The position numbers were made by a program, and so were the translations under genes. 64,000 nt of DNA from the IMG/VR virus record IMGVR_UViG_3300050821_002957, positions 124,001-188,000 of that record. The stretch is one strand, 5' to 3'. Within the stretch, counting starts at the first letter, position 1; the number at the start of each line of letters is the position of its first letter. Positions 14,427-60,276 of this stretch are shown piece by piece. A model generated the notes under the pieces. That model saw nothing but the letters and a program-made list of their open reading frames with translations. It searched no databases and was not told the DNA's origin.

Positions 14427-14516
14427 GCTGAAAATTATACCACACGCAGACAAAAAGATGCAACTACTTGCGAACGTTTATTTTAGGGGAACCGAGAATC
14501 AGGACGATTTCGGCGG

Positions 14517-14600
14517 TTACTGATGTCGATGAACCTGCACACCAGTCCCCACACGTTCTTGCTGTTGCTCGTGTTGGTGTTGATGTGTCATGTTCTTCAC
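14517..14600 (-). promoter_or_regulatory. His/Gln/Glu-rich leader mini-ORF (MKN)MTHQHQHEQQQERVGTGVQVHRHQ*
   Basis: TATAAATA (14606-14613) 5 nt before GTG; hairpin after the stop; upstream of Glu, Glu, Gln, Gln, His tRNAs. Confidence 0.65.
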
Positions 14601-15525
14601 GTTTTTATTTATACAGACAAACAAATTTGGTGGAAGGTCTCTCAGCCATATGGGTGGTATACGTGCCTTCCACCATCCATATCGCACCCTGGTCGTCAAA
14701 GAACCTTCCAGGATCACAGGGTTAATTAGTGTTCCAAAAAGCCTTACAGCCAACCCTGTATCTTTTATACCACTTCTTTTTCAGGATGTCAAGCACCAAC
14801 CAAAAAAGATTTTATATCTGGGTTTTGGATTGTTTAGCGGCTTGATGCTGCCATCTGTGTTGATCTTGATTATGCGTTCGGTGTCTGCCATTATGTTCCT
14901 TTTTTGACGCATCCACATTTTCTCCAATGTAGATGTCCATTACCATGTAGACACTTCACGCAACCGCACGAAGGACGCTGCCAAAGCTCATTGCCATGAA
15001 TGCATTTTACAGGCATCGGCGTCGGAAGTGCCTTGAAATGAAAAAATTTTCTGAAACGATCACGCATCGCCACAGTTCGAGGATCACCCAGGTCAATTTT
15101 ATTCAGATAATCAGCCATCAAAAGTGCAAAGGGCATTATTCCTCCGCTTGTGGACCCAGAAGAGCTTCGATCACAGCCGGATCATTGGTTGTGCTGATAA
15201 TCATATCGGGAATCTGACAACCACTTCCATCGTCATCTCGTGCATCAGGTTTGAAAACGAGAACAGCAGTGAGTCCATTTTGACCTGCTTCTTTGATCAG
15301 ATCGAGATATTCTTGATATGAGGTCATCCATGATCGTAATTATACAACAGGGATGAAAATAAATCCAGGCTCTTGATTAGTTATTTGTTGGTAGACGATC
15401 AGTGCTTCGTTTGGTGTCAAGGAGTCATCAACGTAAACGATAGGGCAAATTTCTTTGGCTTTCACAACATCATCAGAATGACAGATGATGTATTTAACGA
15501 GTGAAGGTGAGGCATTCATAAATTG

Positions 15526-15599
15526 TGGAGCCGGGGCCGAGAATCGAACTCGGGGCTGATCATTACAAGTGAACTGCTTTACCACTAAGCGAACCCGGC
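15526..15599 (-). tRNA. tRNA-Thr(TGT)
   Basis: Loop CTTGTAA, CCA. Confidence 0.93.
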
Positions 15600-15822
15600 G
15601 TATTAGTCCTCAAATTCTACCGTACCATCATCGACATCACTGACAGCCATCGTAACCTGAACGAGCCGATCATTTTCATACCAACGAAGCGTAACAAGAG
15701 AACCTTGAATGGTTACGCCTACGCCGGTCGAAACGAGCTTCTTCCGCATCGCTTCAATAATATCATTAGCGACTGGCTCAACGAATTTTGTTTTTCCTAC
15801 CCACATAAAGCACTTCAAAAAT

Positions 15823-15900
15823 TGGCGGGGTGTGTGGGGCACGATCCCACCATCTCCAACGTGACAGGCTGGCGTCTTAGACCATCTCGACCTACACCCC
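15823..15900 (-). tRNA. tRNA-Asp(GTC)
   Basis: Loop CTGTCAC, G73, CCA. Confidence 0.9.
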
Positions 15901-15980
15901 GTTTACGAACAAAATCAAAACTGCTACAACTAATCCAGCAATAATGCGAACCAAGGATCATTTTCTGGCATTTGAAAATT

Positions 15981-16055
15981 TGGCGGGGCGTAGGAGAATC
16001 GAACTCCCATTTTCTGATAGACAGTCAGATATCGTAGCCGTTGGAACAACGCCCC
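15981..16055 (-). tRNA. tRNA-Asp(GTC), second divergent copy
   Basis: tctga-CTGTCTA-tcaga anticodon arm (unusual U37), CCA. Confidence 0.85.
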
Positions 16056-16062
16056 GTAAGTG

Positions 16063-16115
16063 TGCCGGGACGATTTCTCTCCCGGCAGTTAATCTGATGT
16101 CTGTGTTCGTGTCAT
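16063..16115 (-). promoter_or_regulatory. leader mini-ORF MTRTQTSD* (16089-16115) plus 8-bp hairpin (16063-16087)
   Basis: TATAATA-N4-ATG; three ACA codons and a GAT; directly upstream of the Asp, Asp, Thr(TGT) tRNAs. Confidence 0.6.
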
Positions 16116-16353
16116 ACTGTATTATATAGTCTCACACATTTTCCGATCTGTCAACTCTCATCTAACAATTCCAACAAGGTTAGCGCCAAACCAATCGGAC
16201 CCAAAAGAAAAACCACAATGCTCGCACCGATTTGAAATGGCACACTGTAGATGCTCTCAAGATCTGTAAAAGCAAATTTCCGGCCTTCACGACGAGCGAT
16301 CAACCACATGACCACGAAAGTCATACCACCACATGAGAACCACAAGAACCAAT

Positions 16354-16608
16354 TCACAGTTTCGTCTCCGTAATTTCAACCTTGAAAACACCAAGAACTT
16401 CTTCGATGAATCCGCCGTAATAACCCAGGTCTTCGACGATTTGTGCGCCACGATCACCTTCAGTGGACATTGCTTTCTCAATCTTTGCTAATAACTGAAA
16501 GGCTTCTTCCGGCGTATTGAATATTCGGATTTCGTTTTCCCAGCCGTTGTCCATGCGACCGGAATTGTAATGATACAGACGGAACCGAACTTCATACTTG
16601 GTAATCAT
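16354..16608 (-). CDS. hypothetical protein
   Basis: 84-aa ORF. Confidence 0.5.
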   Translation of the reverse strand: MITKYEVRFRLYHYNSGRMDNGWENEIRIFNTPEEAFQLLAKIEKAMSTEGDRGAQIVEDLGYYGGFIEEVLGVFKVEITETKL

Positions 16609-16851
16609 AAGCTATTCAAAATCGGTCGGACATAATTCTTCGTGTGTATCGGCAGCAAGAAAAACCTTGCCGTGAAAGCGATCTCCGACTTTCACTGGAA
16701 GCGGAATCTTCTCAATCAAAATGGCACACCGGCTCGACCATGCAGGAATCACACCAGACTCCATCTTCTGATATAGCAATTACCCGAAAAAGCGTCCGAA
16801 AGAATCGTTCGGGAGGCGGCTGTTCTCGACCGTAATCAAAAATGCTCTTCA

Positions 16852-17691
16852 TCATCGGTTCTCGAATCTGTCTTCAATTTCACGGACCAAATCAATGAAT
16901 CCCGGCATTCTCTTCACATCTGGGTGCCACATGAAACCCAATTCGATCATGTCCAATGTATCGACAATACGTGCGCCAGGAATCTCATTACCGGCTACGT
17001 CACGTTCACGATCCATAATCCATACCGTATCTGCAATCGCCAAAGCCGAAGGAATGTCATGCGTCACCATAATGATCGTATTTAAATCATCCTGGTTCGC
17101 AACTTCCTGAACGAGCTTCGCCACTCGATTCTTGTTCTTTACATCCAATCCGGCAGTTGGCTCATCCATCAACAAAAAATGTTCTGAGCACAAAAGTTGC
17201 TGGGCAATGGCGACTCGCTGTCTCTGACCACCAGAAAGTTGCGCCGGATATAATTCAGCCTTATTGACCAAATCAAAACGGTTCAGCATCTCCATGCATT
17301 TTTCGTAACCATTCTTTTCGTTGCATCCGGTCTGCTTCACCGAAACCATCAGATTGCTCATGACGGTACGGTTACGATACAGATAATACTGCTGAGAAAC
17401 CATTCCGACGAGGCCAGGAGCGACCGGAGTACGACCATGCCCCAAGTATACATTGCCTGTCGTCGGCTTCTGAAGCCCCGCCAGAATGCGAAGAAACTGG
17501 GTTTTACCGATGCCTGATGGTCCGAGGAAAGCGATAATCTGCCCGGTCACGTCATTGGCAAGCTCAGGCCGGATCAAGTTGTCGATTTTAACGTTGATGT
17601 CTCGAAGAATTAAATTCGATCCATACGACAACGAAACATTCTCGACGGAGAGAAGCGTTTCTGTTCTTGCATATGACATGACGGCACCCAT
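16852..17691 (-). CDS. ABC transporter ATP-binding protein (NitT/TauT type)
   Basis: Walker A GPSGIGKT, signature LSGGQRQR, LLMDEP, VTHD. Confidence 0.95.
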   Translation of the reverse strand: MGAVMSYARTETLLSVENVSLSYGSNLILRDINVKIDNLIRPELANDVTGQIIAFLGPSGIGKTQFLRILAGLQKPTTGNVYLGHGRTPVAPGLVGMVSQQYYLYRNRTVMSNLMVSVKQTGCNEKNGYEKCMEMLNRFDLVNKAELYPAQLSGGQRQRVAIAQQLLCSEHFLLMDEPTAGLDVKNKNRVAKLVQEVANQDDLNTIIMVTHDIPSALAIADTVWIMDRERDVAGNEIPGARIVDTLDMIELGFMWHPDVKRMPGFIDLVREIEDRFENR

Positions 17692-18544
17692 TAAAAGTGG
17701 TTTCCCCAGCGGATGTCTTGCATAACCTTGATAGCTGCTTCGACACCAGCGTGTTTTGTAACCGCCTGAGCTACATCGTCGATCAAGCCACCGATACTAT
17801 GAGCATTTTCGGACTCCGCACGCTCATTCAAGTCTCGGACAATTTTTGCGAGCTTTGTTTCTGGTTTCATTTTCATCCTCCAAAAGTTTCTGTGTACAAC
17901 TGACGAATCTCCATCAAAGTAGTCTGGCGAGAATCCCAATAAGCCAAATTAAAACAAAATTCCTTTTCCAAATTTTGCTTACACTCCAATATCAGAGCAT
18001 CAAGCGTATTCCGAAATAGCACTTTTGGATCTGGTAGGCTCACTGTCTTCTTTTGCCCTCTACAAATTTCCTCGCCGCATTCGGAACCCTTCCAAGTTGC
18101 ATTGACGGTTGATCGGCGCTTTACCGTATGCCCACAATCCAAATACAAAGTCCAGTTACAATATCCACTATACCCTGGTCGCTGCACTTCAGGAAAATCA
18201 GGAACCGCCCGGACAACTTTCCGATACCGGCCCTTGGTTCTCATTTCTTTTTCTTTCCTGGCACAATGATATCTTTCAAAGGAATCCAGATCGAATAGCT
18301 ATCAAATTGAACTTCGATAACTTCTTGTCCAAGAGTCCGTACCGTTCCTTTGACAAGAAGTTTACTCCCAGGTCGGCCCTCTTTCAATTGCGAAAGTTCC
18401 CGTTTGGTCATTTCTTTTTCGCCTTTTCTGCTTCATGATATTGTATCGCTTCAGCCACCACTTCTTCGACATCTGCTACCTTCATACCACAGCCAAGAAG
18501 TTCTGTGACCAAATCCCAAAGACGATCTGATGGAGAAATTATGG

Positions 18545-19405
18545 TCATGAGCGTTCCATTCCTAGGCTGGCGTAAGGACATGCTAGTTTCTTGATGTACT
18601 TGATTACCGCATCCTGAAAGAATCCAATGAGCATGATGACAAAGAGAGCACAGAAAACCCGGTCGAGCTTGAGGTACTTGTTCTCAATCTCCATCATCGC
18701 ACCAATTCCACCTTCATCACGGAAACGACCTTCGACCATCGGAAGCATCATCCATCCCATCGCCACATTGACTGCTATGATGTCGATGACTTGATCCATC
18801 GTTCCCAAAACAACAACTTCCCAGACCACTCGCCATTCACTCATACGAAGTGTCCGACTGTGATCAAACAAATCTTTCGGAATATTTTCAATCATTTTAG
18901 TCAGACTCAAAACTGTGAAGACACCCATTCCAAAAACTAAGAGCGCAACTTTCACGTCGGCATGACTATGAAAAACAGACATGAACACAATCGGCAGTCC
19001 GACAAATCCATTAAAACGACCCAGGCTTACAATTTTCGCCAATGCTGCCCCGGCTGGCGTCACACTCAAAATTGAAAGTGGATACGAAATCGAGAACATG
19101 ATAGCGATTGATGTAAGATTCAGTTGCATCGAGTCCCACAGTCGAATCCCCATACCTTCTTGGAACCACAAAACCGGGAACGCCTGAATCACTTCCATTG
19201 GAGAAGGAAGATACTTGGCTCCAAATGAAATCCAAGCAAAAACCATCATGCCGATCCAAGCACAGATCAAGAGAATTTCAGTTGATTGATTTCTGACGCT
19301 ATTTGGGGAGATCCAATGCATCACCTTCAGCTTACGCTTGACCGGCGTCTTTGGCGTCATGACTACGACAGTTGTGTTCACGGCATCCTTCTTTACTGAA
19401 AGCAT
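18545..19405 (-). CDS. ABC transporter permease (SsuC/TauC-like)
   Basis: Multiple TM segments, YLPSP motif, EAA-like loop (DLFDHSRTLRMS). Confidence 0.85.
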   Translation of the reverse strand: MLSVKKDAVNTTVVVMTPKTPVKRKLKVMHWISPNSVRNQSTEILLICAWIGMMVFAWISFGAKYLPSPMEVIQAFPVLWFQEGMGIRLWDSMQLNLTSIAIMFSISYPLSILSVTPAGAALAKIVSLGRFNGFVGLPIVFMSVFHSHADVKVALLVFGMGVFTVLSLTKMIENIPKDLFDHSRTLRMSEWRVVWEVVVLGTMDQVIDIIAVNVAMGWMMLPMVEGRFRDEGGIGAMMEIENKYLKLDRVFCALFVIMLIGFFQDAVIKYIKKLACPYASLGMERS

Positions 19406-19782
19406 TAATTTCTCTTGTCCGACAAAGTGTGGCGTCCTCGAATTCTAACGTTCATTTTGCTCTCGATTTCATCTTCAATTTTGCCGACTAACTCTGTCAC
19501 TGTATCACGATCACAAGAAAAGGCAAATCCCACTTTACTGTGCGAGGGGCCGCAATTAAAAACAATTTCATATGTGTGAGATAGTTCATCCGTCTCAGGA
19601 TTTTTGTATGTCGAATAAAGAGTAATCGTATCAATAATCCCGCCAGCCATCTCCCACAAAATTTTAAGAAACACATTGGTGTCCCACTTTCCAGGATCGG
19701 TGAGAACAAAACAAATATCTCGACTGATCTTGGTGAGTGAACCGGCAGCAATAGGAACCTTGTTCAATCCAATGTATGTCAT
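19405..19782 (-). CDS. stand-alone ferredoxin-fold anticodon-binding (FDX-ACB) domain protein
   Basis: ISRDICFVL...IIDTITLYSTYKNPET..SHTYEIVF...VRIRG resembles the PheRS C-terminal domain. Confidence 0.6.
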   Translation of the reverse strand: MTYIGLNKVPIAAGSLTKISRDICFVLTDPGKWDTNVFLKILWEMAGGIIDTITLYSTYKNPETDELSHTYEIVFNCGPSHSKVGFAFSCDRDTVTELVGKIEDEIESKMNVRIRGRHTLSDKRN

Positions 19783-19830
19783 GTGATTCTCCTATGAAGG
19801 GAGCCTCCCAAAGGAAGACTCCCAATTCAT

Positions 19831-21693: not shown

Positions 21694-21708
21694 ATTGATT
21701 CGACGAAT

Positions 21709-29515: not shown

Positions 29516-30943
29516 ATGAATTTTGAAACTTTGAAGCACACAAACTATGGGGCAACTGTCGTAACGCTCTCGAAGTTTGTTGCATTGGAAAAGGGTGATG
29601 GTGGCCGTCAGGCGTGCGACAACGTGAAAGCTGCGTTGATTTTTGGTATGCAGGTTATCGTCAGCAAGGATGTCGAAGCTGGTTCGGTAGGTCTGTATTT
29701 CCCTGCGGAGACTGCGCTGTCAGCAGAATTCCTGGGTCAGAACAACCTCTATCGCAAGGCCGAGTTTGGCAACACCGATCCCGAAAAGAAGGGATTTTTC
29801 GAGCAGCATGGTCGTGTCCGTGTCGTGAAGTTCCGTGGTCACAAGTCGGAAGGCTTCTGGATTCCGCTGGACTCACTCAAGTATCTGGGCCTGCCGCTGT
29901 CGGAATTTCCAGTTGGTGCTGAATTCGATTTTGTGAACGAACACGAAATCTGCCACAAGTACATTCCTCGCCGTAACCGGGTGTCGAATCCTTGTGCGCC
30001 TCGTGGCCGTAAGGCTCGTGTCGAAGACAAGCTGGTAGACGGTCAGTTCCGTTTCCATATCGATACGGCGCAGCTTCGTCGTAATGCTCATCGTATCGAA
30101 CCGGACACGTTAATCTCGGTGTCTGAGAAGTGGCATGGTACGTCGGCCATCTTCTCGAACATCCTGGTAAAGCGTGATCTGGCGTGGTATGAGCGTGCGC
30201 TGAAGTGGCTGGGCACGAAGATCCAGGAATACGAATTCGGTTTCACCTGGGCGTCTCGCCGTGTTGTGAAGGGTGTGGATGGCGAAGCAAAGAAGGATGC
30301 CGTTCATTTTTACTCGACCGACATCTGGGGCACGGTCGCAAAGGAAGTCCAGGAATTCATTCCGAAGGGCTTCACGATTTACGGCGAAATTGTCGGCTTT
30401 ACGCCGGATGGTGGTGCGATCCAAAAGGGTAAGACTGGTGTTTACCATTATGGTTGCCAGCCGGGTACGCATCGCTTCTTGGTGTATCGTGTCACGTCAA
30501 CGAACTACGATGGTAAGGTCGTAGAACTGGCGTGGCCGCAAATGAAGGAATTCTGCCGCAAGTACGGTCTCGAAATGGTCAAGGAACTATACTATGGCCG
30601 TGCGGATGGATTCTTTCCGATGGATCGAGTTGAAGCGTTCGACAACGAAGGCTATTCAATCGGTAATCGCAACATGACGCTCGACGAATGGCAGGAAGGT
30701 TTTGTCAAGGCGCTTGAAAAGGCGTTTGTCTATGACCAGATGTGCCAACACAACAACATGGAAGTTCCGGCAGAAGGTGTCGTGGTCCGTGTTGAACGCT
30801 ACGACGAATGCGAAGCCTTCAAACTGAAGTCGTTCCTGTTCCTCCAGCACGAGTCTGATCAGTTGGACAAGGGCGAACTGGACATGGAAACGGCAGAAGC
30901 CGAAGGTGGCGCTGACGAAGTTACGGAAGGCGCAGAAGCATGA
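29516..30943 (+). CDS. RNA ligase, DRB0094-like (N-terminal OB-like domain)
   Basis: VKFRGHKSEG, EKWHGTS, IYGEIVG, EGVVVR and FKLKS motifs. Confidence 0.85.
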   Translation: MNFETLKHTNYGATVVTLSKFVALEKGDGGRQACDNVKAALIFGMQVIVSKDVEAGSVGLYFPAETALSAEFLGQNNLYRKAEFGNTDPEKKGFFEQHGRVRVVKFRGHKSEGFWIPLDSLKYLGLPLSEFPVGAEFDFVNEHEICHKYIPRRNRVSNPCAPRGRKARVEDKLVDGQFRFHIDTAQLRRNAHRIEPDTLISVSEKWHGTSAIFSNILVKRDLAWYERALKWLGTKIQEYEFGFTWASRRVVKGVDGEAKKDAVHFYSTDIWGTVAKEVQEFIPKGFTIYGEIVGFTPDGGAIQKGKTGVYHYGCQPGTHRFLVYRVTSTNYDGKVVELAWPQMKEFCRKYGLEMVKELYYGRADGFFPMDRVEAFDNEGYSIGNRNMTLDEWQEGFVKALEKAFVYDQMCQHNNMEVPAEGVVVRVERYDECEAFKLKSFLFLQHESDQLDKGELDMETAEAEGGADEVTEGAEA

Positions 30944-35731: not shown

Positions 35732-35999
35732 AATCCTCTTTACAATCGTTCATGGATCTGTTAGTATTTGGTCCATGAACGATTCCCTAAAAGGCACAAT
35801 GAATTTGAATGAACTGATCATGGGTGTTCGGGCGGAACCGGCATTTAATGGTAAGGTTCGTCTTAAGTATCTTGCAATTTCAGGAGGCTGTGGCCCGGAA
35901 CTGAGCATGGACTTCGATTTAGCAAGAAAAACCATCATGGCATTGGAAACGGCAATGGCGGGTGGAACCTACGAAAGCGAATAAAGGTACATCTACCTG

Positions 36000-52230: not shown

Positions 52231-52236
52231 TAGAGT
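52197..52236 (+). promoter_or_regulatory. sigma70-type promoter with AGATGTATCT palindrome
   Basis: TTGACA-N17-TAGAGT-N6-ATG. Confidence 0.7.
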
Positions 52237-52586
52237 TTGTTCATGACGTACCGTATTCGTTTTCGCAACATAGGTTCCTTGCACGAATCGGAACCAAAGA
52301 CTTTCAATGAGGCATGGGTTATCGCCATCAATCTCTCCCATTGGAATCAGCGTGTCGATATTATTGACGCTGAGACCGGCGAAGTACTCAAATCCTCAGA
52401 ACCGTACTCCGAGAATGGGGCACGGCAACTTGAAGCGATGCTGGCGCAGTAAAGGCCAATCCTGGTGATTCGTGGAGCCTCTGCTGTTCGAGGCTCTCCC
52501 CACCGGGGTCTTATAAATAAAAACGTGGCAACCCCACATAGGAGGTCATCAATGTCAAGATTTATAGCTTAGGAGGCTTTAAATAC

Positions 52587-53495: not shown

Positions 53496-53716
53496 TGCTA
53501 CAATGAGTGCATGAGATTTCTGTGTACGTTCCTTTTCTTTTTTGCAATTCTCTTGGGTGCCGAGACTCTTGCTAACAGTCACCATTTTATGGTGACCGGC
53601 ACAGTACGAAATTACACAATCACAGAATTTCAACCTTCAAAGAACACACATTGTTACGTACTTGAACCTCATTACGATAGCAACTCACCATCGATCAGTT
53701 GCGTCGTCGAGCCATA

Positions 53717-54280: not shown

Positions 54281-54632
54281 CCGCAAAAATGATATTGGAA
54301 TTAGAAGACGTTTTGGACAGAAAAGAGTCTCAAGAACTGACTCGTACTTTATTGTGTCGTTTGCTGGCAAAGTACCGAGCGGCAAATTTCTTCATAAAGT
54401 ATCACATCTCGTTGAATCGTACATATCCACAAATTATTTTGCAATATCCAGACAGCCGAAAAGAACGCTGGCTGTACAAAGAAAAAGGACTTGAACTGAT
54501 TCCTTTTGGATTGCCAATCGTCTATAAGGTTCCTACCACAGTACGAAAGTGTGGGCAAATACATAGTTGTCGTAATGGATGTTCCCAATGCTGGGAGATC
54601 ACCAAAATTGAAAAGGGGTATACCGAGGTAAG

Positions 54633-55220
54633 ATGATTTACTCAGGAACCGGCCATCGACTGGAAGTGTTGCGTGGGGCCGACGAAACTATCGATCTAGA
54701 AGTTATCCACCACAAAGCTGTCAGGTATGCGAAAAGCATTCTTCCATCTTACGCCGACATCACTCAAGGTATTTCAGGAATGGCAATTGGATGGGACACT
54801 GCCTTTGCTCTAGCTCTGCTCGATCACGGTGTCCCAGTGATCGCTGCCATTCCGTTTATTGGTCAAGAAAGCATTTGGCCGGAACATGCCAAAAAACGTT
54901 ATCACGAAATTCTTGACAAGTGCGCCGAGGTCCATGTTGTCTGTGAAGGTGGTTACGCTCCGCACAAATATCATGAGCGGGACAAATGGATGGTCGAGCG
55001 GGGTCAAAAAATGATGGCTCTATGGAACGGTCATCCAAAAGGTGGAACTGCTGCGACCGTGCGCTATGCAAAGAAGGCAGGCAAAGAAATTGTCAATGTC
55101 TGGCCGGGATGGGAAATTTTTGAAATTGGATGCCCATGCGGATGCGGAGCCGATAGCGAGTCACATTGTTGGAATGCTTCTACGTGGGATAATGAAGGTG
55201 GTCAAACTCAAATTTTTTGA
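54633..55220 (+). CDS. SLOG-superfamily protein (YspA/DUF1273-like)
   Basis: TGHR, ISGMAIGWD, AIPF.GQE and GGTAATVRYA motifs. Confidence 0.88.
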   Translation: MIYSGTGHRLEVLRGADETIDLEVIHHKAVRYAKSILPSYADITQGISGMAIGWDTAFALALLDHGVPVIAAIPFIGQESIWPEHAKKRYHEILDKCAEVHVVCEGGYAPHKYHERDKWMVERGQKMMALWNGHPKGGTAATVRYAKKAGKEIVNVWPGWEIFEIGCPCGCGADSESHCWNASTWDNEGGQTQIF

Positions 55221-55529
55221 TACGACGTATACCCATACCGTTTCCGAATTGCATTATGAGCCTTCTCTTGTAAAACTGAATCAACCGTTGGACTAGACCA
55301 TGTATAAAAAGTTGCTTGAGTTGTTCGATTGACATGATCCACTGTGATCACACCATGCTGAAGAGAACGGTGATCGTCAATGCCATGATCGTCGGCTAGA
55401 ACTTTATGTGATTCTTTGTCGGTGCCGATTACGTAACGGTCAAAATCTAAAATGTATGGATAAACTTCCTTAACCAATTGAGAATGTTTTTTCATTGAAT
55501 TCGTGGTATACTTCATCCCAGAAATATTT

Positions 55530-55886
55530 ATGCAGAGAATCACTCCAGACCCAACCGGAAAAGACGCTCCAACCCCAGAAACATTGGTGAATATGCTATA
55601 TGGCAGAGTCGAGGAACTTGAAGCCATTGTGAAACGCCTAGAGCCTCAACCGCATTGGTCGGGAGCATCTAAAAGTCTTGTGATGCGTCTGAGAGGCATC
55701 TACGCAATAGGCCCAAACGCAATGCAAATGGGACCCAACGACAAACCAGAATTTGGCTGGCGCACTTTCGACCAAATGCCTCCAATCCAATTTGAAGCGG
55801 CAGCACGCATTCAAGAATTGGAAGACAGACTTCAAAAATGCCTTGAACGATTTTTCAAACAGGAATGTGATCTTCGAGGAATCTGA
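55530..55886 (+). CDS. hypothetical protein
   Basis: ORF in the gene run. Confidence 0.5.
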   Translation: MQRITPDPTGKDAPTPETLVNMLYGRVEELEAIVKRLEPQPHWSGASKSLVMRLRGIYAIGPNAMQMGPNDKPEFGWRTFDQMPPIQFEAAARIQELEDRLQKCLERFFKQECDLRGI

Positions 55887-56073
55887 TGTCACAAGGCGTT
55901 TTTAGTTCTTGTGGTTTTTGTGGACTCCATCTCCCTTTGACTTTTGATGAACAAAAAGATGCCGACCGAGCATGGAAATTCAGCGGAATGAACATCCATG
56001 AATGGCATCGCCGCAAGTTTCCAAATTACCATCCCCGGTTGACATTCAAGGTTCCGCTTGATATCATTGAGAA

Positions 56074-57054
56074 ATGTCAAAGCCAGACAAAAAAGATTCA
56101 GTGATCCTTACCGGGACCATTGGATCTCATAGCTACGGAACGGCCACGCCGACTTCAGATTACGACTACATGTCCGTCGTGATTGCATCGTCTGACGTGT
56201 ACCTGGGTCTTGACAATTGGGGAACTGCTGGAACCAAAGACGACGTTTACGAAGATCCCGAAAAGAGTCTGGTCGAACATCGGTATTTTGAATTGAAAAA
56301 GTTCGTTGGTATGTGCGCCGGAATGAACCCAAATGCAGTTCCGCTTTTGTGGCTGCAACCGGAGCACTACGAAACCATGTCGGCGGCTGGTAGAAAGCTC
56401 GTCCAGGCCCGAGAGATTTTTAATTCCAAAAAAGCATACGATACGTTCTCTGGTTACGCTCATGGTCAGCTTCAAAAAATGGGCGGCGTGTTCAATGATG
56501 CCGAAGAGTCGAACAAACTCTTGAAGCAAGGTCATATCAAATTTCAAGACTGGTCTGAAGACATGATCAAGCTGCTTCGGATGATTCGTGATGGAAAGTC
56601 ACCGATCCCTGAAGACGCCAAGCCTGCGGACATTTACATTTACGACGAAGGATGGTTGAACGCTCTTATTGCCTTGAAGACTCATTCCAAGGAAGAGATC
56701 AAGCGTATCAAAGACGGTCCAATCACCGGGCGCATGGGAGCGAAGCGGAAAGAGCTTCGTTCTCAATATGGTTTCGACACTAAATTTGCTTTTCATACGA
56801 TTCGACTGATGAGAATGTGCGTCGAATTTCTTACGCACCCTGAAGAAGGTCTGAAGGTGTACCGCAAAGACATCGATGCTGACTTCTTGTACTCAATCAG
56901 AACCGGCGCTGTCTCACAAGAAGACATCAAGAAGATGGCCGACGACCTGTTCGCTCAAGCCAAAGAAGCCTTGGTCACCACGTCTCTTCCAGATAAGCCT
57001 GACACCGAAGCAATTCATAACTTGACGATGGACCTGATTAGATCATCCATTTGA
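56074..57054 (+). CDS. Pol-beta-type nucleotidyltransferase (YcgL/RlaP-like)
   Basis: GSHSYGTATPTSDYD, NPN and FDTKFAFHTIRL motifs. Confidence 0.85.
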   Translation: MSKPDKKDSVILTGTIGSHSYGTATPTSDYDYMSVVIASSDVYLGLDNWGTAGTKDDVYEDPEKSLVEHRYFELKKFVGMCAGMNPNAVPLLWLQPEHYETMSAAGRKLVQAREIFNSKKAYDTFSGYAHGQLQKMGGVFNDAEESNKLLKQGHIKFQDWSEDMIKLLRMIRDGKSPIPEDAKPADIYIYDEGWLNALIALKTHSKEEIKRIKDGPITGRMGAKRKELRSQYGFDTKFAFHTIRLMRMCVEFLTHPEEGLKVYRKDIDADFLYSIRTGAVSQEDIKKMADDLFAQAKEALVTTSLPDKPDTEAIHNLTMDLIRSSI

Positions 57055-57098
57055 CAGATCACAACTTTCCATAGCAGCTATATAACTAATAGACTGCT

Positions 57099-57563
57099 AT
57101 GGATATTACACAGTACATTTCGGTGGGTTTGAGTGCCTTGGGACTTGTAGGTGGTTTATTCTCCTACGTTCTAAGCCTACGTATCAAACACGACATTCTA
57201 GAGAACAACGAAAAACTTGAAAAAGACATTCAAGCTGCAAAGGACGCAGCTACAGTTGGACTATCTCAACTTAGGAATGATTTACTTCGAGAGTTTGGAA
57301 CCAATCAGGATAAGGGCGACGAAAAACGAGAACGCCTTGAACGTGAATTGGGCGATCTCCAGGCCGGTCTTACAGATCGTATTCTAAATGCAGTAAATGG
57401 GAAGTATGTAAGGATCGATATTCATCAACAAGCTATAGCCAATATTCAAGATCGTTTCCTATCCATGAAAGAACTTATCGAAGTCAACATGGGTAAGATT
57501 GAGCAAGGTCTGGATCGGCAAATTTTAGACTTGAAGGATCGAATCTTTCATCAACCCAAATAA
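57099..57563 (+). CDS. membrane-anchored coiled-coil protein
   Basis: N-terminal TM segment followed by a coiled coil. Confidence 0.6.
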   Translation: MDITQYISVGLSALGLVGGLFSYVLSLRIKHDILENNEKLEKDIQAAKDAATVGLSQLRNDLLREFGTNQDKGDEKRERLERELGDLQAGLTDRILNAVNGKYVRIDIHQQAIANIQDRFLSMKELIEVNMGKIEQGLDRQILDLKDRIFHQPK

Positions 57564-57819
57564 GGGGTAAGCAATGGCCGATAAAGCTGTAGCAACGAAA
57601 AGAGAGAAACTTACCATCGATCCCCGAGAATTGATGTTGTATGAGCTTCAAAAGGTCCGTAAGACATTCGCAGACGTAGCGGTCCAAGTATCCAAGGATC
57701 TTACGAAAGTGATGCCTACAAACTTGACATAATCCGTCGATGTGCTATCGTGGTGTTGTGAAGTTTCAAACAATGAGCTAGGACAACCTTGTTCATATCT
57801 AGGAAAACAAAAAACAAAC

Positions 57820-58308
57820 ATGAAAAATTTAATTGCATTATTTGTATTGGCATTGGGCACTGTCTTTGCACAGTCCGCAGTACCGCAGAATGAAGTTTTT
57901 GGCAACGTAGGTCTGTCGTTCCCTCGCACGCCTGCAATCACGACCACCGTCAGCGCAACCGCAGGTTATGGTCGGACTCTGGCAAACGAAACCTTTGGCA
58001 GCACTGAAGTGATCGGCACTTATGATTTCACTCGTGCTACCCCGAAGGGCGGCGTTCAGTCTTTCTTGGGTGGCGTGAAGCAAAACTTCAAGAGCACTCT
58101 TCCGGGCATCGTTCCATTCTTGTCGGTCCAAGTCGGTGAGGCAACATTGCTTCGTAAGACCAGCTTTGCAACCGAAGTAGCTGGCGGCGTTCGGTTCACC
58201 AAGCTGTGCCCATTGTTTGGCGTCGATCTTGGCGTCAAGGGTACGAAGGTTGATGACAAGACACCGATGTATGGTGGTGTGTTCGTCGGCCTCTCGAAGA
58301 GCTTCTAG
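57820..58308 (+). CDS. putative outer-membrane beta-barrel protein
   Basis: Signal peptide, amphipathic strands, C-terminal VGLSKSF. Confidence 0.6.
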   Translation: MKNLIALFVLALGTVFAQSAVPQNEVFGNVGLSFPRTPAITTTVSATAGYGRTLANETFGSTEVIGTYDFTRATPKGGVQSFLGGVKQNFKSTLPGIVPFLSVQVGEATLLRKTSFATEVAGGVRFTKLCPLFGVDLGVKGTKVDDKTPMYGGVFVGLSKSF

Positions 58309-58367
58309 TTTTAAGAGCGTCTAGAATCGTCTAGACAATTTCAACGAGGGTGTGTTAGTATGAGAAC

Positions 58368-59060
58368 ATGAAAACTCTGCTAACCGCCCTCGTTTTATTT
58401 GGTGTTGCTGCTTCAGCGCAGACATCGCAAGAAAAGCCGTGCCCAAATGGTGGCTACGGTCCAGATTGCATCGTTCCCGGACTATTGCAACTTCCTTCCG
58501 AAACCACGACCACTCCTAAGTCCGATAAGATTTCTGACGGATCAACATCAAATGATCTGTTCTTCATGGTTGGCTCCGATTTCGACCGTCCTGGTTTGCT
58601 GCCTCGTGCAAATTACAATGTCGGCCTGGGTCACACTTTCTCCTTCTTGACCAATTCTCCTGTTCATTATTTCGGCGATGAAGTTACCGTTGCGTACACT
58701 TACGAAAACGGTGGACCGAAAGGTTTCTGGCATGGTCCTACAAGCACCAGCACTGAAAGCCTTGGTCTGATGAAAAACATCAGCATTCCGCATACGAAGA
58801 AAGTTACTGTCTACACTTGGCCGCAACTCGGTCTTACATCCATTTTTACCGGAAAGCCAGCGACAATACTGGATACAAAAGTGGTTGTTGATGGTGTTCC
58901 TCTTCCTCCCACACAAAATCGTCTGTATGCCGGTTTTGCTATTGGGGCGATCATCCACCTTCCACACAACACGTCCATTTGGATTCAAGAGAGCTACAAC
59001 AAAGTCGTGACGGTGCCGTGGTACACAACGACTTCGATTGGCTATACGATCAGCTTCTAA
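58368..59060 (+). CDS. putative outer-membrane beta-barrel protein
   Basis: Signal peptide, C-terminal IGYTISF beta-signal. Confidence 0.6.
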   Translation: MKTLLTALVLFGVAASAQTSQEKPCPNGGYGPDCIVPGLLQLPSETTTTPKSDKISDGSTSNDLFFMVGSDFDRPGLLPRANYNVGLGHTFSFLTNSPVHYFGDEVTVAYTYENGGPKGFWHGPTSTSTESLGLMKNISIPHTKKVTVYTWPQLGLTSIFTGKPATILDTKVVVDGVPLPPTQNRLYAGFAIGAIIHLPHNTSIWIQESYNKVVTVPWYTTTSIGYTISF

Positions 59061-59214
59061 TGATACTACAATCACTAAAACAATTTTTGGGACGCATTAT
59101 GTTTTAGTCTCCTTGGGATGTTCCCTTCGGTATTTAGTTGCTAGAATATTTCTTCCGGCATAGGAAAATTTTATAAGGTATTGACAGGATACGGGTCTTG
59201 TGCTATAAATAGAG

Positions 59215-59490
59215 TCGTAGCAGATAGTCGAAGTGAACGAAGAACGCTTCTTGGACATGGGTTCAATTCCCATCGGCTCCACCAAAATTCTGATTTTAGG
59301 CATCAGAGAACTTATGGGGCCGCCCCGGTTTCGACAGGATGAGATGTTGCGTAAGCAGGGCTACCGTGGTCCTTGTCCACGTTATCCAGAAGGAATCATA
59401 AACGCTAATGCACCTGCATTTGCTTTCGCTGCCGCTGCCTAAACAGCGCTCGAACGAAGTCGGAGAACTTTGTTAAAGAACTCCCAACAG
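59215..59490 (+). ncRNA. ssrA: two-piece (circularly permuted) tmRNA, tag ANAPAFAFAAAA
   Basis: T arm and CGGCUCCACCA (ends 59284) precede GGGGCCG...GGUUUCGAC (starts 59316); G3.U70 pair; tag ORF 59404-59442; TTGACA/TATAAA promoter upstream. Confidence 0.92.
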
Positions 59491-59521
59491 AAGGCCGGGG
59501 CAACTCGGCCTTTTGCTTTTT
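59491..59521 (+). terminator. intrinsic terminator after the tmRNA
   Basis: aaggccggg-gcaa-ctcggcctt hairpin followed by a T run. Confidence 0.85.
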
Positions 59522-59681
59522 GAAAGGTTGTGTTTATGAGACGACATTTGAAAATGGTCCATCACCACGGCAAACGAGCACTAAAGTCTAAGTACGGACA
59601 GGTGTTCATCATCCTGTGGTTCGTGCCGGAAGCCATTGCACTTTTTGGTTTGATATGGGCTGCATGGCGACACCTTGTAAA

Positions 59682-60032
59682 ATGAAGTTTCTTCTGTTCA
59701 TTCTCTTATTCTTCGCATCAAGCGCCTGGGCCGCAGAGAAGCCTCTTGTCGAAAAATGCTTCAAAGTCCAGTCTCTCATCAAGGCAGATCCAGAGCATTA
59801 TTGGGCTACCTGGAAGAACGCCTGTCCGTACATCATTGACTCGATCTACGTAAACGTCGATTTCAAAGACAAGGCCGGAAGCATTCTTGGACATGGAGTC
59901 TGGTCGCTACATTATGTCAAACCGGGCGAGGGCCGCTACATTCGATTCTCAACTCCATCCTTGACAAGTGACTATTTCTCTGTTATCTTAAAAGAGATTA
60001 CTTTGGACGCTTTCAAAGCTCTACGGTACTAA
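59682..60032 (+). CDS. secreted hypothetical protein
   Basis: Signal peptide MKFLLFILLFFASSAWA. Confidence 0.6.
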   Translation: MKFLLFILLFFASSAWAAEKPLVEKCFKVQSLIKADPEHYWATWKNACPYIIDSIYVNVDFKDKAGSILGHGVWSLHYVKPGEGRYIRFSTPSLTSDYFSVILKEITLDAFKALRY

Positions 60033-60040
60033 ATACGAAC

Positions 60041-60104
60041 ATGGTACGTTTTTCCACCATCACGACAAGCACTACCACGACCGTCTAGTTCCTCTAGAAC
60101 GGTC
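60041..60104 (+). promoter_or_regulatory. thrL-like leader peptide MVRFSTITTSTTTTV* (60041-60088) with hairpin (60079-60104)
   Basis: 7 Thr in 10 codons; CTAAATA-N5-ATG; 35 nt upstream of two tRNA-Thr genes. Confidence 0.8.
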
Positions 60105-60123
60105 CACTTCCCATTTCAATTAA

Positions 60124-60199
60124 GCCGAATTAGCTCAGTTAGCAGAGCGCCGCCCTCGTAATGCGGAGGTCATGAGTGCAACTCTCATATTCGGCTCCA
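60124..60199 (+). tRNA. tRNA-Thr(CGT)
   Basis: Loop CTCGTAA, CCA; atypical T loop TGCAACT. Confidence 0.9.
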
Positions 60200-60202
60200 A
60201 AT

Positions 60203-60276
60203 GCCGCCTTATTTCAATGGTAGACTCTATCTCTGGTACAGATAGGATTTGGGTTCGATTCCCAAAGGCGGCTCCA
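60203..60276 (+). tRNA. tRNA-Thr(GGT)
   Basis: tatct-CTGGTAC-agata anticodon arm, CCA. Confidence 0.9.

What the first reader, a model, noticed from the sequence alone, without database searches (positions are those of the whole stretch)
14480..60276. Codon-matched leader peptides in front of phage tRNA clusters: candidate tRNA-shortage-sensing attenuation system
Seen: three separate tRNA clusters are each preceded by a promoter, a leaderless mini-ORF and a hairpin. In each case the mini-ORF is enriched in codons read by the tRNAs downstream. (1) 60041-60088 has Thr ACC/ACG/ACT before Thr(CGT) and Thr(GGT). (2) 16089-16115 has ACA x3 and GAT before Asp, Asp and Thr(TGT). (3) 14517-14600 has CAT/CAC, CAA/CAG and GAA/GAG before Glu(TTC), Glu(CTC), Gln(TTG), Gln(CTG) and His(GTG). 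Known: thrL/hisL-type attenuators use ribosome stalling on such codons to control amino-acid biosynthesis operons. Inference: the phage turns on its own tRNAs when cognate host tRNA is uncharged, depleted or cut by anticodon nucleases. I do not know of this being described for phage tRNA genes.
Basis: partly seen in the sequence, partly recalled or inferred. Interest (0 to 1): 0.95.

Follow-up and report, generated by a model that had tools for sequence, protein, structure and literature searches.

The report
Codon-matched leader mini-ORFs before phage tRNAs
In a 405-kb soil jumbo phage and its relatives, tiny leaderless reading frames rich in exactly the codons read by the phage tRNA genes downstream, each ending at a conserved hairpin, sit in front of those genes. 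This looks like a previously undescribed way for a virus to tune its own tRNA supply to how well those codons are being decoded.

Summary
All three mini-ORFs, their hairpins and the downstream tRNAs are where stated. Among 1,185 ATG-started short ORFs in the window, the three rank 2nd, 1st and 1st for codons read by their own downstream tRNA cluster.

- **Thr leader:** the Thr-rich leader and hairpin before tRNA-Thr(CGU)/(GGU) recur in 4 diverged relatives, with compensatory hairpin changes.
- **His/Gln/Glu leader:** it recurs in 5 relatives, always upstream of ligase, followed by Glu/Gln/His tRNAs wherever the contig reaches that far.
- **ACA/GAT leader:** it recurs in 1 of 3 relatives.

Start codons lie 5 nt after T4-late-like TAAATA motifs, which predicts leaderless mRNAs.

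These are not thrL/hisL family members. They lack a U-run terminator and a competing antiterminator, and give no Rfam hit. ORF 3 is separated from its tRNAs by a promoter and the ligase gene.

My best reading (confidence about 0.5) is a single-hairpin, ribosome-occlusion leader. Ribosomes dwelling on cognate codons next to the hairpin keep it open, which alters read-through or processing into the tRNA genes. The sign of the control is unproven. I class it as a new variant of a known kind, of high interest.

The parts
60027..60035 (+). TACTAAATA, a T4-late-promoter-like motif 5 nt before the sORF1 ATG. It predicts a leaderless transcript. A sigma70-like TTGACA(59961)-N17-TATCTT(59989) lies further upstream.
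   Evidence: The same TAAATA-N5-ATG/GTG spacing occurs at several genes in the window. The motif and spacing are conserved in L039 (TATAAATAcgatcATG).
60041..60088 (+). sORF1, MVRFSTITTSTTTTV*: a Thr-rich leader ORF (7 Thr in 14 codons after the start).
   Evidence: Homologues in L036, L039, L037 and L035.
60079..60104 (+). Hairpin 1 (GACCGTCTAG / CTAGAACGGTC). Its 5' arm is the last Thr/Val codons plus the stop codon. It is followed by the C/U-rich tail CACTTCCCATTT (60105-60123).
   Evidence: (6 consensus pairs, 2 with compensatory changes).
60124..60276 (+). tRNA-Thr(CGU) and tRNA-Thr(GGU).
   Evidence: The synteny tmRNA...Thr-Thr is conserved in L035, L036, L037 and L039.
16121..16154 (-). 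Promoter of cluster 2: TTGACA (16154-16149) ... GTGAGACTATATAAT (ends 16121), 5 nt before the sORF2 ATG.
   Evidence: The same promoter is conserved in L033 and L121. An RNA-library contig ends at 16105 with adapter sequence.
16089..16115 (-). sORF2, MTRTQTSD* (ACA x3, GAT).
   Evidence: All 24 sense-codon nt are identical in L121. Absent in L033 and L032.
16064..16086 (-). Hairpin 2 (GCCGGGA / TCCCGGC), 2 nt after the stop codon and 8 nt before tRNA-Asp.
   Evidence: L121 has a hairpin of different sequence at the same place.
15526..16055 (-). tRNA-Asp(GUC) x2, a 79-aa ORF and tRNA-Thr(UGU).
14606..14613 (-). TATAAATA late-type promoter motif, 5 nt before the GTG at 14600. An early-type promoter TTGACA(14792)-N17-TATAAA(14764) and a roughly 150-nt structured spacer lie upstream.
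   Evidence: TATAAATA is conserved upstream of sORF3 in L032, L033, L121 and L014, with CTAAATA in L122.
14517..14600 (-). sORF3, (VKN)MTHQHQHEQQQERVGTGVQVHRHQ*. The His/Gln/Glu codon tract (R1) pairs with the conserved GU-rich segment GAACGTGTGGGGACTGGTGTG (R2). R2 can alternatively pair with the C-terminal His/Gln codons (R3).
14486..14513 (-). Hairpin B (CCGAAATC / GATTCTCGG) plus a TTCCCC tail, 3 nt after the sORF3 stop codon.
   Evidence: Each of 6 genomes forms a hairpin here with a different stem sequence.
13128..14463 (-). Ligase promoter (TTGCAT 14463-14458, TATAAT 14439-14434) and the leaderless ATP-dependent DNA ligase gene (14426-13128).
   Evidence: The promoter and ATG spacing are conserved in relatives.
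10551..13083 (-). tRNA-Glu(UUC), Glu(CUC), Gln(UUG), Gln(CUG) and His(GUG), interspersed with an AlkB-like 2OG-Fe(II) oxygenase ORF (12817-12215) and an HNH endonuclease ORF (11496-10936).
   Evidence: The same tRNA set follows the ligase in L032, L033 and L121, and in part in L122 and L022.

Best explanation
The three elements are cis-acting, translated leader ORFs on the primary transcripts of phage tRNA genes. I call the proposed device a single-hairpin, ribosome-occlusion leader.

**Proposed mechanism.** Transcription starts at, or a few nt before, the start codon, 5 nt after a TAAATA-type motif. This gives a leaderless mRNA that a ribosome can load directly. The ORF is packed with codons read by the tRNAs encoded downstream, and it stops inside or 2-9 nt before a conserved hairpin. 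A ribosome whose A site is on one of the last roughly five codons physically prevents that hairpin from forming. In every family those codons include cognate ones: Thr in sORF1, Asp in sORF2, His-x-Gln in sORF3. When the cognate charged tRNA is scarce, ribosomes dwell there longer and the hairpin stays open. RNA polymerase, or the processing machinery, then proceeds into the tRNA genes. When decoding is fast, the hairpin forms and damps tRNA output. In sORF3, an additional conserved helix (codon tract R1 pairing with R2, alternatively R2 with R3) could serve as a pause or synchronising element.

**Shown:**
- the ORFs, their codon bias and its statistical exceptionality;
- their conservation, the hairpins and their covariation;
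- the promoter-to-start spacing and the obligatory passage of tRNA transcription through leaders 1 and 2;
- the geometry of occlusion, in silico only.

**Inferred:**
- that the ORFs are translated;
- that the hairpin lowers tRNA output, as a weak terminator, a pause or a processing block;
- the sign of the response.
For: **Existence and statistics.**
- Within the window the three sORFs rank 2nd, 1st and 1st of 1,185 for their own cluster's codon set.
- The Thr leaders are the top 3 of 234 sORFs upstream of tRNA cluster heads in about 60 phage loci.

**Conservation with change.**
- sORF1 family: window, L036, L039, L037 and L035 all keep a Thr-rich ORF end plus hairpin before Thr(cgt)/Thr(ggt).
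- This holds although the N-terminal parts are non-homologous (73-aa and 56-aa frames in L036 and L035, no BLASTP similarity) and L035 has an HNH gene inserted.
- Two of the six hairpin pairs covary.
- sORF3 family: 6 genomes, down to 52% ligase identity, keep an ORF of 24-30 codons with 8/24 to 17/29 His/Gln/Glu codons.
- Its indels are in frame and its synonymous changes include CAA/CAG, CGG/CGT, GGT/GGC and TTT/TTC. The last sense codon is always Gln.
- The Glu/Gln/His tRNA set follows the ligase in every relative whose contig extends that far, including L022.
- sORF2 is identical in L121, with a different hairpin sequence.

**Start context.**
- TAAATA + 5 nt + ATG/GTG recurs at real genes in the window.
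- An RNA-library contig spanning sORF2, the hairpin, tRNA-Asp1 and part of Asp2 ends with adapter sequence 10 nt inside sORF2. This is compatible with a start at the ATG and with read-through of the hairpin.

**Geometry and architecture.**
- Constrained folds show the hairpin is lost only when the A site is on the last roughly 5 codons or the stop codon.
- Only 8-35 nt lie between hairpin and tRNA in families 1 and 2, so no other promoter can serve those tRNAs.
- L033 drives the same tRNA-Asp from the same promoter without a leader. The leader is therefore an add-on, as expected of a regulator.

**Precedent.** In mycobacteria, leaderless polycysteine sORFs act through stalled ribosomes that block an mRNA structure (bioRxiv 10.1101/834739).
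Against: - No hairpin is followed by a U-run. The tails are C/U- or A-rich (CACUUCCCAUUU, UUCCCCUAAAA), and the terminator scan misses them.
- No alternative structure competes with the hairpin when upstream codons are masked.
- A ribosome at the stop codon masks the hairpin as well as a stalled one. The leaders are also so short (60-90 nt) that a ribosome could influence the same polymerase only if the polymerase pauses.
- The sORFs have no Shine-Dalgarno sequence, and translation is not demonstrated.
- All three frames of the CA-rich tracts are open, so openness of the frame carries no information.
- CA-rich 27-mers are common in the window, about 60 in total.
- Some segments are conserved at the nucleotide level far beyond what codon identity needs. 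R2 is nearly invariant in 4 genomes, and all 24 sense-codon nt of sORF2 are identical in L121.
- sORF3 is separated from its tRNAs by a hairpin, a promoter and a 1.3-kb gene.
- sORF2 is missing in L033 and L032.
- The Met, Val and Gly tRNA heads have no leader.
- The RNA evidence consists of low-depth, undirected contigs, and DNA carry-over cannot be excluded.
Confidence: 0.5

Rival explanations
1. The elements are the same translated leaders but with the opposite sign, as in a pyrBI/pyrE-type coupling attenuator. Only a ribosome that follows the polymerase to the end of the sORF prevents the hairpin. Efficient decoding of the cognate codons would then give read-through, and stalling further upstream would give hairpin formation and less tRNA. 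This is a feed-forward or commitment switch rather than a shortage sensor.
For: - The stop codon lies inside or 2-9 nt before the hairpin, which is the defining geometry of pyrE/pyrBI attenuators (established knowledge).
- Masking by a ribosome with its A site on early cognate codons leaves the hairpin intact. This applies to sORF1 codons 6 and 8, sORF2 codons 2, 4 and 6, and the whole R1 tract of sORF3.
- No antiterminator exists.
Against: - Positive feedback on tRNA supply has no obvious benefit.
- The cognate codons closest to the hairpin would still open it when stalled.
- There are no U-rich polymerase pause tracts in the leaders.
- The hairpins lack U-run tails, so their terminator function is itself doubtful.
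Confidence: 0.15
2. These are RNA-only leader elements. The CA-rich tract, GU-rich partner and hairpin would form a 5' structure used for precursor processing, stability or protein binding. The reading frames would be untranslated, and the codon/tRNA match would be a by-product of CA-rich sequence, since CA-rich triplets encode Thr, His, Gln, Pro, Asn and Lys.
For: - Nucleotide-level conservation exceeds coding needs. GAACGTGTGGGGACTGG(T/C)GTG is nearly invariant in window, L032, L121 and L122, although ligase identity falls to 52%.
- All 24 sense-codon nt of sORF2 are identical in L121 while the adjacent hairpin differs.
- R1 pairs with R2 in all family-3 members.
- There is no SD, all three frames are open, and CA-rich tracts are frequent.
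- A hairpin plus (U)CCCC also occurs at ordinary gene ends at 35783 and about 52490.
Against: - Other frames of the same tracts would give His/Asp (sORF1), His/Glu (sORF2) or Asn/Thr/Ser (sORF3). In all 13 family members the start-codon-defined frame is the cognate one.
- Rearranged genomes (L036, L035) replaced the upstream part yet stay in the Thr frame.
- Family-3 indels are in frame, and third-position variation within CAN keeps the codons as His or Gln.
- The start codon sits at the predicted +1 of a TAAATA promoter, as in real leaderless genes of this phage.
- sORF1 sequences differ widely in nucleotides but keep Thr.
Confidence: 0.2
3. The sORFs are independent small genes whose peptides act in trans. 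The Thr-rich and His/Gln-rich micro-proteins would have their own function and merely be syntenic with the tRNA genes.
For: - There is some peptide-level conservation (ERVGTGV; S-T-x-T-x-K-T-A).
- Hairpin B plus its tail could end a separate small transcript upstream of the ligase promoter.
Against: - The peptides are 8-30 residues, of low complexity and variable length.
- In family 1 only the codon-rich tail is conserved, and it is fused to non-homologous N-termini.
- This gives no explanation for a match to the downstream tRNA identities in three separate loci.
Confidence: 0.07
4. The match is a chance coincidence found by searching a 64-kb window for a pattern.
For: - Single-residue-rich sORFs do arise by chance. 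One example is MNRNNIGNLN before a tRNA-Asn in L068, which is an out-of-frame ORF inside a gene.
- About 25 of 3,480 sORFs in the window have at least 43% of one residue.
Against: - The three rank 2nd, 1st and 1st of 1,185 for their own cluster's codons.
- Two families are conserved across 5 and 6 diverged genomes with covarying hairpins.
Confidence: 0.03

Closest known systems
Leader-peptide transcription attenuators of amino-acid operons (thrL, hisL, trpL, pheL, leuL; Rfam Thr_leader, His_leader)
   Same: Both have a short ORF at the 5' end of the transcript, enriched in codons that report on one or a few amino acids, ending next to a hairpin upstream of the regulated genes. The sORF1 peptide (MVRFSTITTSTTTTV) even resembles E. 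coli ThrL in style. sORF3 has a 1:2 / 2:3-like pair of alternative helices involving the codon tract.
   Different: The regulated genes are tRNA genes, in a phage. The mRNA is leaderless. There is a single hairpin without a U-run. No antiterminator is mutually exclusive with it. There is no Rfam match.
Mycobacterial polycysteine leaderless sORF attenuators, the 'Cys ribulon' (Canestrari et al., bioRxiv 10.1101/834739)
   Same: Both are leaderless short ORFs carrying a run of sensed codons. In the mycobacterial system, ribosomes stalled in the tract block an mRNA structure, and several loci share one signal.
   Different: There, the blocked structure sequesters the ribosome-binding site of a protein-coding gene, so control is translational. 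Here the downstream genes are untranslated tRNAs, so the output must be transcription, pausing or processing.
pyrBI (pyrL) and rph-pyrE coupling attenuators of E. coli
   Same: The leader ORF ends within or a few nt before a single attenuator hairpin, so a ribosome close behind the polymerase prevents hairpin formation.
   Different: Those sense polymerase speed (UTP) through U-rich pause sites and have canonical U-run terminators. Here the distinctive feature is the codon content of the ORF.
T-box riboswitches
   Same: Functionally analogous: a cis-RNA that senses the supply of a particular charged tRNA and controls genes of the same decoding pathway.
   Different: T-boxes bind tRNA directly, have no ORF, and regulate aminoacyl-tRNA synthetase and amino-acid genes. 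No T-box model matches here.
tRNA gene arrays of large lytic phages (T4, T5-like), with homing endonucleases between tRNAs and a proposed role against tRNA-targeting defences (eLife 2023;12:e85183, seen)
   Same: Clusters of phage tRNA genes are interspersed with HNH/LAGLIDADG ORFs, next to RNA-repair genes.
   Different: I found no description of codon-matched leader ORFs or tRNA-responsive control for these arrays in four literature searches.

Membership tests
thrL/hisL-type leader-peptide transcription attenuator | Short translatable leader ORF at the 5' end of the transcript | tested here: met
   ATG/GTG lies 5 nt after a TAAATA-type motif, and a start codon is present in all 13 family members. 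Translation itself was not tested.
thrL/hisL-type leader-peptide transcription attenuator | Clustered regulatory codons matching the regulated pathway | tested here: met
   Cognate codons are 6/14, 4/7 and 14/23, ranking 2nd, 1st and 1st of 1,185 sORFs. The bias is conserved in relatives.
thrL/hisL-type leader-peptide transcription attenuator | Intrinsic terminator: GC-rich hairpin directly followed by a U-run | tested here: not met
   Hairpins are present, but the tails are CACUUCCCAUUU, ACACUUAC and UUCCCCUAAAA. None is reported by the terminator scan.
thrL/hisL-type leader-peptide transcription attenuator | Antiterminator structure mutually exclusive with the terminator, favoured when the ribosome stalls on the regulatory codons | tested here: not met
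   In constrained folds with a 28-30-nt ribosome mask, the hairpin persists unless the mask itself covers it. In sORF3, R2 re-pairs with R3 without touching hairpin B.
thrL/hisL-type leader-peptide transcription attenuator | Similarity to the curated RNA families (Rfam Thr_leader, His_leader and related) | tested here: not met
   There is no hit at gathering score in the window, and none at E<=1 or E<=10 on the three leaders.
Leaderless sORF ribosome-stalling attenuator (mycobacterial Cys ribulon type) | sORF starts at the 5' end of the mRNA (leaderless) | tested here: inconclusive
   The promoter-to-start spacing predicts +1 at the start codon. An RNA-library contig ends 10 nt inside sORF2. 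No direct TSS mapping was done.
Leaderless sORF ribosome-stalling attenuator (mycobacterial Cys ribulon type) | Stalled ribosome blocks an mRNA structure | tested here: inconclusive
   In silico, ribosomes on the last roughly 5 codons, which include cognate codons, remove the hairpin. There is no experimental test.
Leaderless sORF ribosome-stalling attenuator (mycobacterial Cys ribulon type) | [quoted passage not shown] | tested here: not met
   The downstream genes are tRNAs (families 1 and 2) or a leaderless ligase with its own promoter (family 3).
pyrBI/pyrE coupling attenuator | Leader ORF terminates within or just upstream of a single attenuator hairpin | tested here: met
   The stop codon is inside the 5' arm or loop in sORF1, 2 nt before the hairpin in sORF2 and 3 nt before it in sORF3.
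pyrBI/pyrE coupling attenuator | U-rich polymerase pause sites and a canonical U-run terminator that sense the nucleotide pool | tested here: not met
   The leaders are CA-rich with no U-runs.
T-box riboswitch | Specifier loop, T-box sequence and match to the T-box covariance model | tested here: not met
   No Rfam T-box hit in the window.

The most novel reading that the evidence does not exclude
Jumbo phages carry built-in tRNA-supply sensors. These would be leaderless mini-ORFs whose translation speed over Thr, Asp/Thr(ACA) or His/Gln/Glu codons sets how much of the matching phage tRNA genes is transcribed or matured. The phage would then induce precisely those tRNAs that the host lacks, has left uncharged, or has cut with anticodon nucleases. 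This would be the first case of leader-peptide sensing that controls tRNA genes themselves, and a new layer of phage counter-defence.
Probability: 0.35. Interest if true: 0.9.

Novelty: new variant of a known kind. Interest (0 to 1): 0.8.

Why it matters
Why large phages carry tRNA genes, and how those genes are controlled, is a long-standing open question. A codon-matched, ribosome-read leader directly in front of tRNA genes would make tRNA supply a sensed and regulated quantity during infection. It would connect phage tRNAs mechanistically to host tRNA depletion by starvation, anticodon nucleases or tRNA-targeting toxins.

It would also extend leader-peptide attenuation, known for amino-acid and a few other operons, to non-coding RNA genes. 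The elements are small (60-130 nt) and their predictions are sharp: start-codon removal, synonymous versus non-cognate codon swaps, and hairpin mutations. The idea is therefore directly testable with reporters.

Tried and rejected
**Searches for relatives that found nothing useful**
- GenBank phages (blastn, distant mode) hold no relative. Only tRNA-sized hits came back.
- IMG/VR holds only the source contig and an identical 68.8-kb copy for the conserved motifs GAACGTGTGGGGACTGG and ATGACACGAACACAGACATCAGAT.
- A homologue search with the 405-aa ORF 61025-62242 found only the protein itself.
- Two contig look-ups returned no DNA.

**Known-family and structure tests**
- Rfam gave no Thr_leader, His_leader or T-box match.
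- The search for a classical antiterminator by constrained folding was negative.
- RNAalifold on hairpin B gave a poor consensus because MAFFT misaligns stems of different length. I rely on the per-sequence folds instead.

**Generality tests**
- The Met, Val and Gly tRNA heads in the window and relatives have no matching leader.
- In about 60 unrelated large-phage loci, nothing comparable appeared apart from two cases. One is a chance out-of-frame Asn-rich ORF in L068. The other is a weak candidate in L079 (p 1.5e-4 among 234 tests).
- A bacterial survey used the pattern ACCACNACNACN, 10-40 nt, then GCYGNNNTAGCTCAG in 185,579 genomes. It gave 42 stretches (43 matches), and 32 matches were not at a tRNA.
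- Of the 11 matches at tRNAs, 8 are tRNA-Thr. That 5' motif is itself typical of tRNA-Thr, however.
- The two cases I read in full (L129, L160) are C-termini of longer frames. One more (L128) looked from the 100-nt extract like the 3' end of a preceding tRNA.
- The count is no higher than my rough chance estimate, so this gives no evidence for bacterial counterparts.

**Other negative results**
- Codon-level specificity of the sORF1 family (avoidance of ACA) is not supported. ACA is 3 of 29 Thr codons there, against 17% genome-wide.
- The metatranscriptome data are too thin for 5'/3'-end mapping.

Full report
**What the window is.** The 64-kb window is positions 124,004-188,003 of a 405,631-bp viral contig from a soil metagenome (IMGVR_UViG_3300050821_002957). 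An identical 68.8-kb contig also exists.
- It has no close relative among GenBank phages.
- It carries 14 tRNA genes and a permuted (two-piece) tmRNA.
- It also carries an IF3 homologue, an RNA ligase, an RlaP-type RNA-repair nucleotidyltransferase, an AlkB-like oxygenase, an ATP-dependent DNA ligase and HNH endonucleases among the tRNAs.
- Relatives encode T4-type gp32, gp59 and the late-transcription co-activator family.
- Many genes in the window begin 5 nt after a (T/C)TAAATA motif resembling the T4 late promoter TATAAATA. That resemblance rests on my knowledge of T4. The spacing puts the predicted +1 on the start codon, so these would be leaderless mRNAs. Genes inside operons use AGGA/GGAG ribosome-binding sites instead.

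**Checking the observation.** All three mini-ORFs are present as described.
- sORF1 (60041-60088, +) reads MVRFSTITTSTTTTV*. It starts 5 nt after TACTAAATA. It ends inside a hairpin (60079-60104) that is followed by CACTTCCCATTTCAATTAA and then tRNA-Thr(CGU) and tRNA-Thr(GGU).
- sORF2 (16115-16089, -) reads MTRTQTSD* (ACA x3, GAT). It starts 5 nt after TATATAAT. A GC-rich hairpin (16086-16064) follows, and 8 nt later come tRNA-Asp, tRNA-Asp, a small ORF and tRNA-Thr(UGU).
- sORF3 (14600/14591-14517, -) reads (VKN)MTHQHQHEQQQERVGTGVQVHRHQ*. It starts 5 nt (GTG) after TATAAATA and is followed by hairpin B (14513-14492) and TTCCCC.
The Glu, Glu, Gln, Gln and His tRNAs come only after that, over 2.5 kb.

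**Is it more than chance?**
- Of 1,185 ATG-started sORFs of 7-40 codons on both strands of the window, the three rank 2nd, 1st and 1st for the codons read by their own downstream cluster.
- CA-rich tracts as such are common, about 60 in the window, and all three frames of these tracts are open. The informative fact is therefore that the frame fixed by the start codon is the cognate one.
- The other frames would read His/Asp for sORF1, His/Glu/Arg for sORF2 and Asn/Thr/Ser for sORF3.

**Relatives.** Homologue searches with the ligase and RlaP proteins, followed by contig look-ups and a metagenome scan, gave diverged relatives at 52-80% protein identity.

*sORF1 family.* Every genome with the Thr(cgt)/Thr(ggt) pair has a Thr-rich ORF end plus hairpin just upstream:
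- L039: MFLTFTTRTTSKTAGY*, with TATAAATA-cgatc-ATG.
- L037: MLITLTSTSTTKTA*, wedged between the tmRNA and the tRNA.
- L036: ...MASKLNITFSTTSTTTTV*.
- L035: ...MRFFSTSTNKTA*.

In L036 the original ATG is lost. About 200 nt are inserted, yet a new ORF runs in frame into the Thr tract. In L035 a 53-codon frame does the same, and an HNH gene has been inserted between hairpin and tRNA. The N-terminal parts of these two frames share no similarity, so only the Thr tract and hairpin are conserved. The hairpin has two compensatory pair changes among six consensus pairs.

*sORF3 family.* Six genomes keep a 24-30-codon ORF with 8/24 to 17/29 His/Gln/Glu codons, always ending in Gln.
- Indels are in frame, and synonymous differences occur.
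- A hairpin follows the stop codon in each, with a different stem sequence each time.
- Then come a conserved TTGCAT promoter and the leaderless ligase.
- The ligase is followed by Glu/Gln/His tRNAs wherever the contig extends.

*sORF2 family.*
- All 24 sense-codon nt are identical in L121, the most distant relative, and are followed there by a hairpin of different sequence.
- L033 uses the same promoter but starts tRNA-Asp 13 nt after the -10 box.
- L032 has only Thr(tgt), behind a plain 21-nt leader.

*Wider scan.* In a scan of 234 sORFs upstream of tRNA cluster heads in about 60 loci, the Thr leaders are the three best and the two sORF2 copies rank 8th and 10th. The other good scores are a chance out-of-frame ORF (L068) and one weak candidate (L079).

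**Anatomy and mechanism.**
- Each leader folds into a stable hairpin at its 3' end.
- sORF3 additionally has a conserved helix between the His/Gln codon tract (R1) and the nearly invariant GU-rich segment GAACGUGUGGGGACUGGUGUG (R2). When R1 is masked, R2 re-pairs with the C-terminal His/Gln codons (R3), leaving hairpin B untouched.
- With a ribosome-sized mask moved along each ORF, the terminal hairpin disappears only when the A site is on the last roughly five codons or the stop codon.
- Those last codons include cognate ones in every family: T-T-T-T-V* or T-K-T-A*, S-D*, and H-x-Q*.
- None of the hairpins has a U-run. The tails are C/U-rich or UUCCCC followed by A-rich sequence. Similar hairpin-plus-(U)CCCC elements occur at ordinary gene ends at about 35783 and 52490.
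- In families 1 and 2, only 8-35 nt separate hairpin and tRNA. All tRNA transcription must therefore traverse the leader, and the hairpin cannot be an efficient unconditional terminator.
- An RNA-library contig covers 15869-16105 (the rest of sORF2, the hairpin, tRNA-Asp1 and part of Asp2) and carries adapter sequence at 16105, 10 nt inside sORF2.
- Another RNA-library contig covers 14320-14492, which is the ligase start and the promoter region up to hairpin B.
- These contigs are compatible with a start at the sORF2 ATG and with read-through. They are low-depth, undirected, and not proof of transcription.

**Interpretation.** The data support a conserved functional link between a start-anchored, codon-biased mini-ORF, a hairpin, and tRNA genes that decode those codons.
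- The most economical mechanism is ribosome occlusion of a single hairpin. Ribosomes that linger on the cognate codons adjacent to the hairpin keep it open and let transcription or processing continue into the tRNA genes.
It is close in principle to the mycobacterial leaderless polycysteine sORFs, where stalled ribosomes block an mRNA structure (bioRxiv 10.1101/834739).
- The sign is not established. A terminating ribosome masks the hairpin too, and stalls on early codons leave it intact, so a pyrBI/pyrE-like coupling device with the opposite response is a real alternative.
- An RNA-only reading is kept alive by the unusually strong nucleotide conservation of R2 and sORF2 and by the absence of SD sequences. 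It does not explain why the start-defined frame is always the cognate one, or why rearranged genomes preserve that frame.

**Comparison with known systems and novelty.**
- The elements fail three defining tests for thrL/hisL attenuators: U-run terminator, competing antiterminator and Rfam similarity. They are not T-boxes.
- They share the leaderless sORF and ribosome-blocks-structure principle with the mycobacterial Cys ribulon. They differ in regulating untranslated tRNA genes.
- Four full-text searches found no description of leader ORFs controlling phage or bacterial tRNA genes.
- A one-shot pattern survey of bacterial genomes gave no evidence for counterparts.
- I therefore class this as a new variant of a known kind: ribosome-mediated leader control with a new target class and a new host (a virus).

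**Verdict.**
- Observation: confirmed.
- Interpretation: partly supported.
- Confidence that these are functional translated codon-sensing leaders for tRNA genes: about 0.5.
- Confidence that they specifically switch tRNAs on under shortage: about 0.35.
- Interest: 0.8.

Noticed in passing
window 59192-59533 (+); L035:12533, L036:11459, L037:12800, L039:6055, L043:5728: The phage encodes a permuted (two-piece) tmRNA behind a TTGACA-N17-TATAAATA promoter (Rfam tmRNA_permuted, 93.5 bits). It is conserved in all relatives, but the tag peptide differs in each: ANAPAFAFAAAA, ANSYEYALPLAA, ANNQNVMAMAA, ANYNSYAMAA, ANNFALPVAA, ATNMVAPMTMAAAA. It lies immediately upstream of the Thr leader/tRNA module.
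   Followed up: partly
window, e.g. 60027, 14613, 11509, 41780, 3583, 52512, 59204: A (T/C)TAAATA motif like the T4 late promoter recurs, typically 5 nt before ATG/GTG, implying many leaderless mRNAs. TAAATA is otherwise under-represented: 20 occurrences against about 49 in shuffles. Relatives encode the T4 gp33-like late co-activator family.
   Followed up: partly
window 3026-3565 (-); L032:17780-18319; L121:12457-12999: The phage encodes a full-length translation initiation factor IF3 homologue (IF3_N and IF3_C, E 4e-24 and 4e-29). This is notable in a genome that appears to rely heavily on leaderless mRNAs, which IF3 normally discriminates against.
   Followed up: no
window 14614-14765 (-); L122:320-575; L032:9665-9760: A structured spacer of 100-250 nt lies between an early-type promoter (TTGACA-N17-TAxxxT) and the TATAAATA/sORF3 start. 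It has several predicted stems and no Rfam match. Its sequence is not visibly conserved between relatives, and it is absent in L033.
   Followed up: partly
window 6212-6285 (-): A 14th tRNA-like gene is found only by Rfam (39.6 bits), directly upstream of tRNA-Val. ARAGORN does not call it, and its identity was not determined.
   Followed up: no
window ~7060-7110 (-); L121:9700-9800: There are tRNA-like T-arm sequences (GTGGTTCGATTCCA) inside an otherwise non-tRNA transcript, behind a promoter upstream of tRNA-Met. This may be a tRNA-like small RNA or a decayed tRNA.
   Followed up: no
L032:15665-15770; L033:16975-17100: A conserved structured RNA candidate lies upstream of tRNA-Val/Met in relatives (GTGCTGGTGG...ACCTAGCTGTAGGGT...AGTCAGCAC). 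It was not searched against Rfam and is not seen in the window.
   Followed up: no
window 35738-35795 (+) and 52470-52510 (+): Strong hairpins followed by TTCCCTAAAA or CCCCACC sit at ordinary gene ends. They have the same hairpin-plus-(U)CCCC signature as after sORF1 and sORF3. This may be the phage's usual transcript-end or processing signal in place of a U-run terminator.
   Followed up: partly
window 29516-30943 (+), 56074-57054 (+), 12215-12817 (-): An RNA ligase (PF09414), an RlaP RNA-repair nucleotidyltransferase and an AlkB-like 2OG-Fe(II) oxygenase are embedded among the tRNA genes. This is a repair toolkit consistent with tRNA damage as a selective pressure.
   Followed up: partly
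window 10936-11496 (-), 60331-60957 (+); L035:13050-13285; L121:1040-1525: Mobile-endonuclease-type ORFs (HNH, a Zn-ribbon ORF, a LAGLIDADG-like ORF) are inserted at different places between the tRNAs in different relatives. In L035 one lies between the Thr leader hairpin and tRNA-Thr.
   Followed up: partly
L079:14073-14129 (+): In an unrelated 300-kb phage contig, an 18-codon sORF (MNSTKRNRSEAKRQWHRA*) lies 127 nt upstream of a 13-tRNA cluster (Trp, His, Lys, Arg, Ala, Asn, Gln). Of its 17 residues after the start, 13 belong to that set (p 1.5e-4 among 234 tests). This is a weak candidate for a second, independent case.
   Followed up: partly
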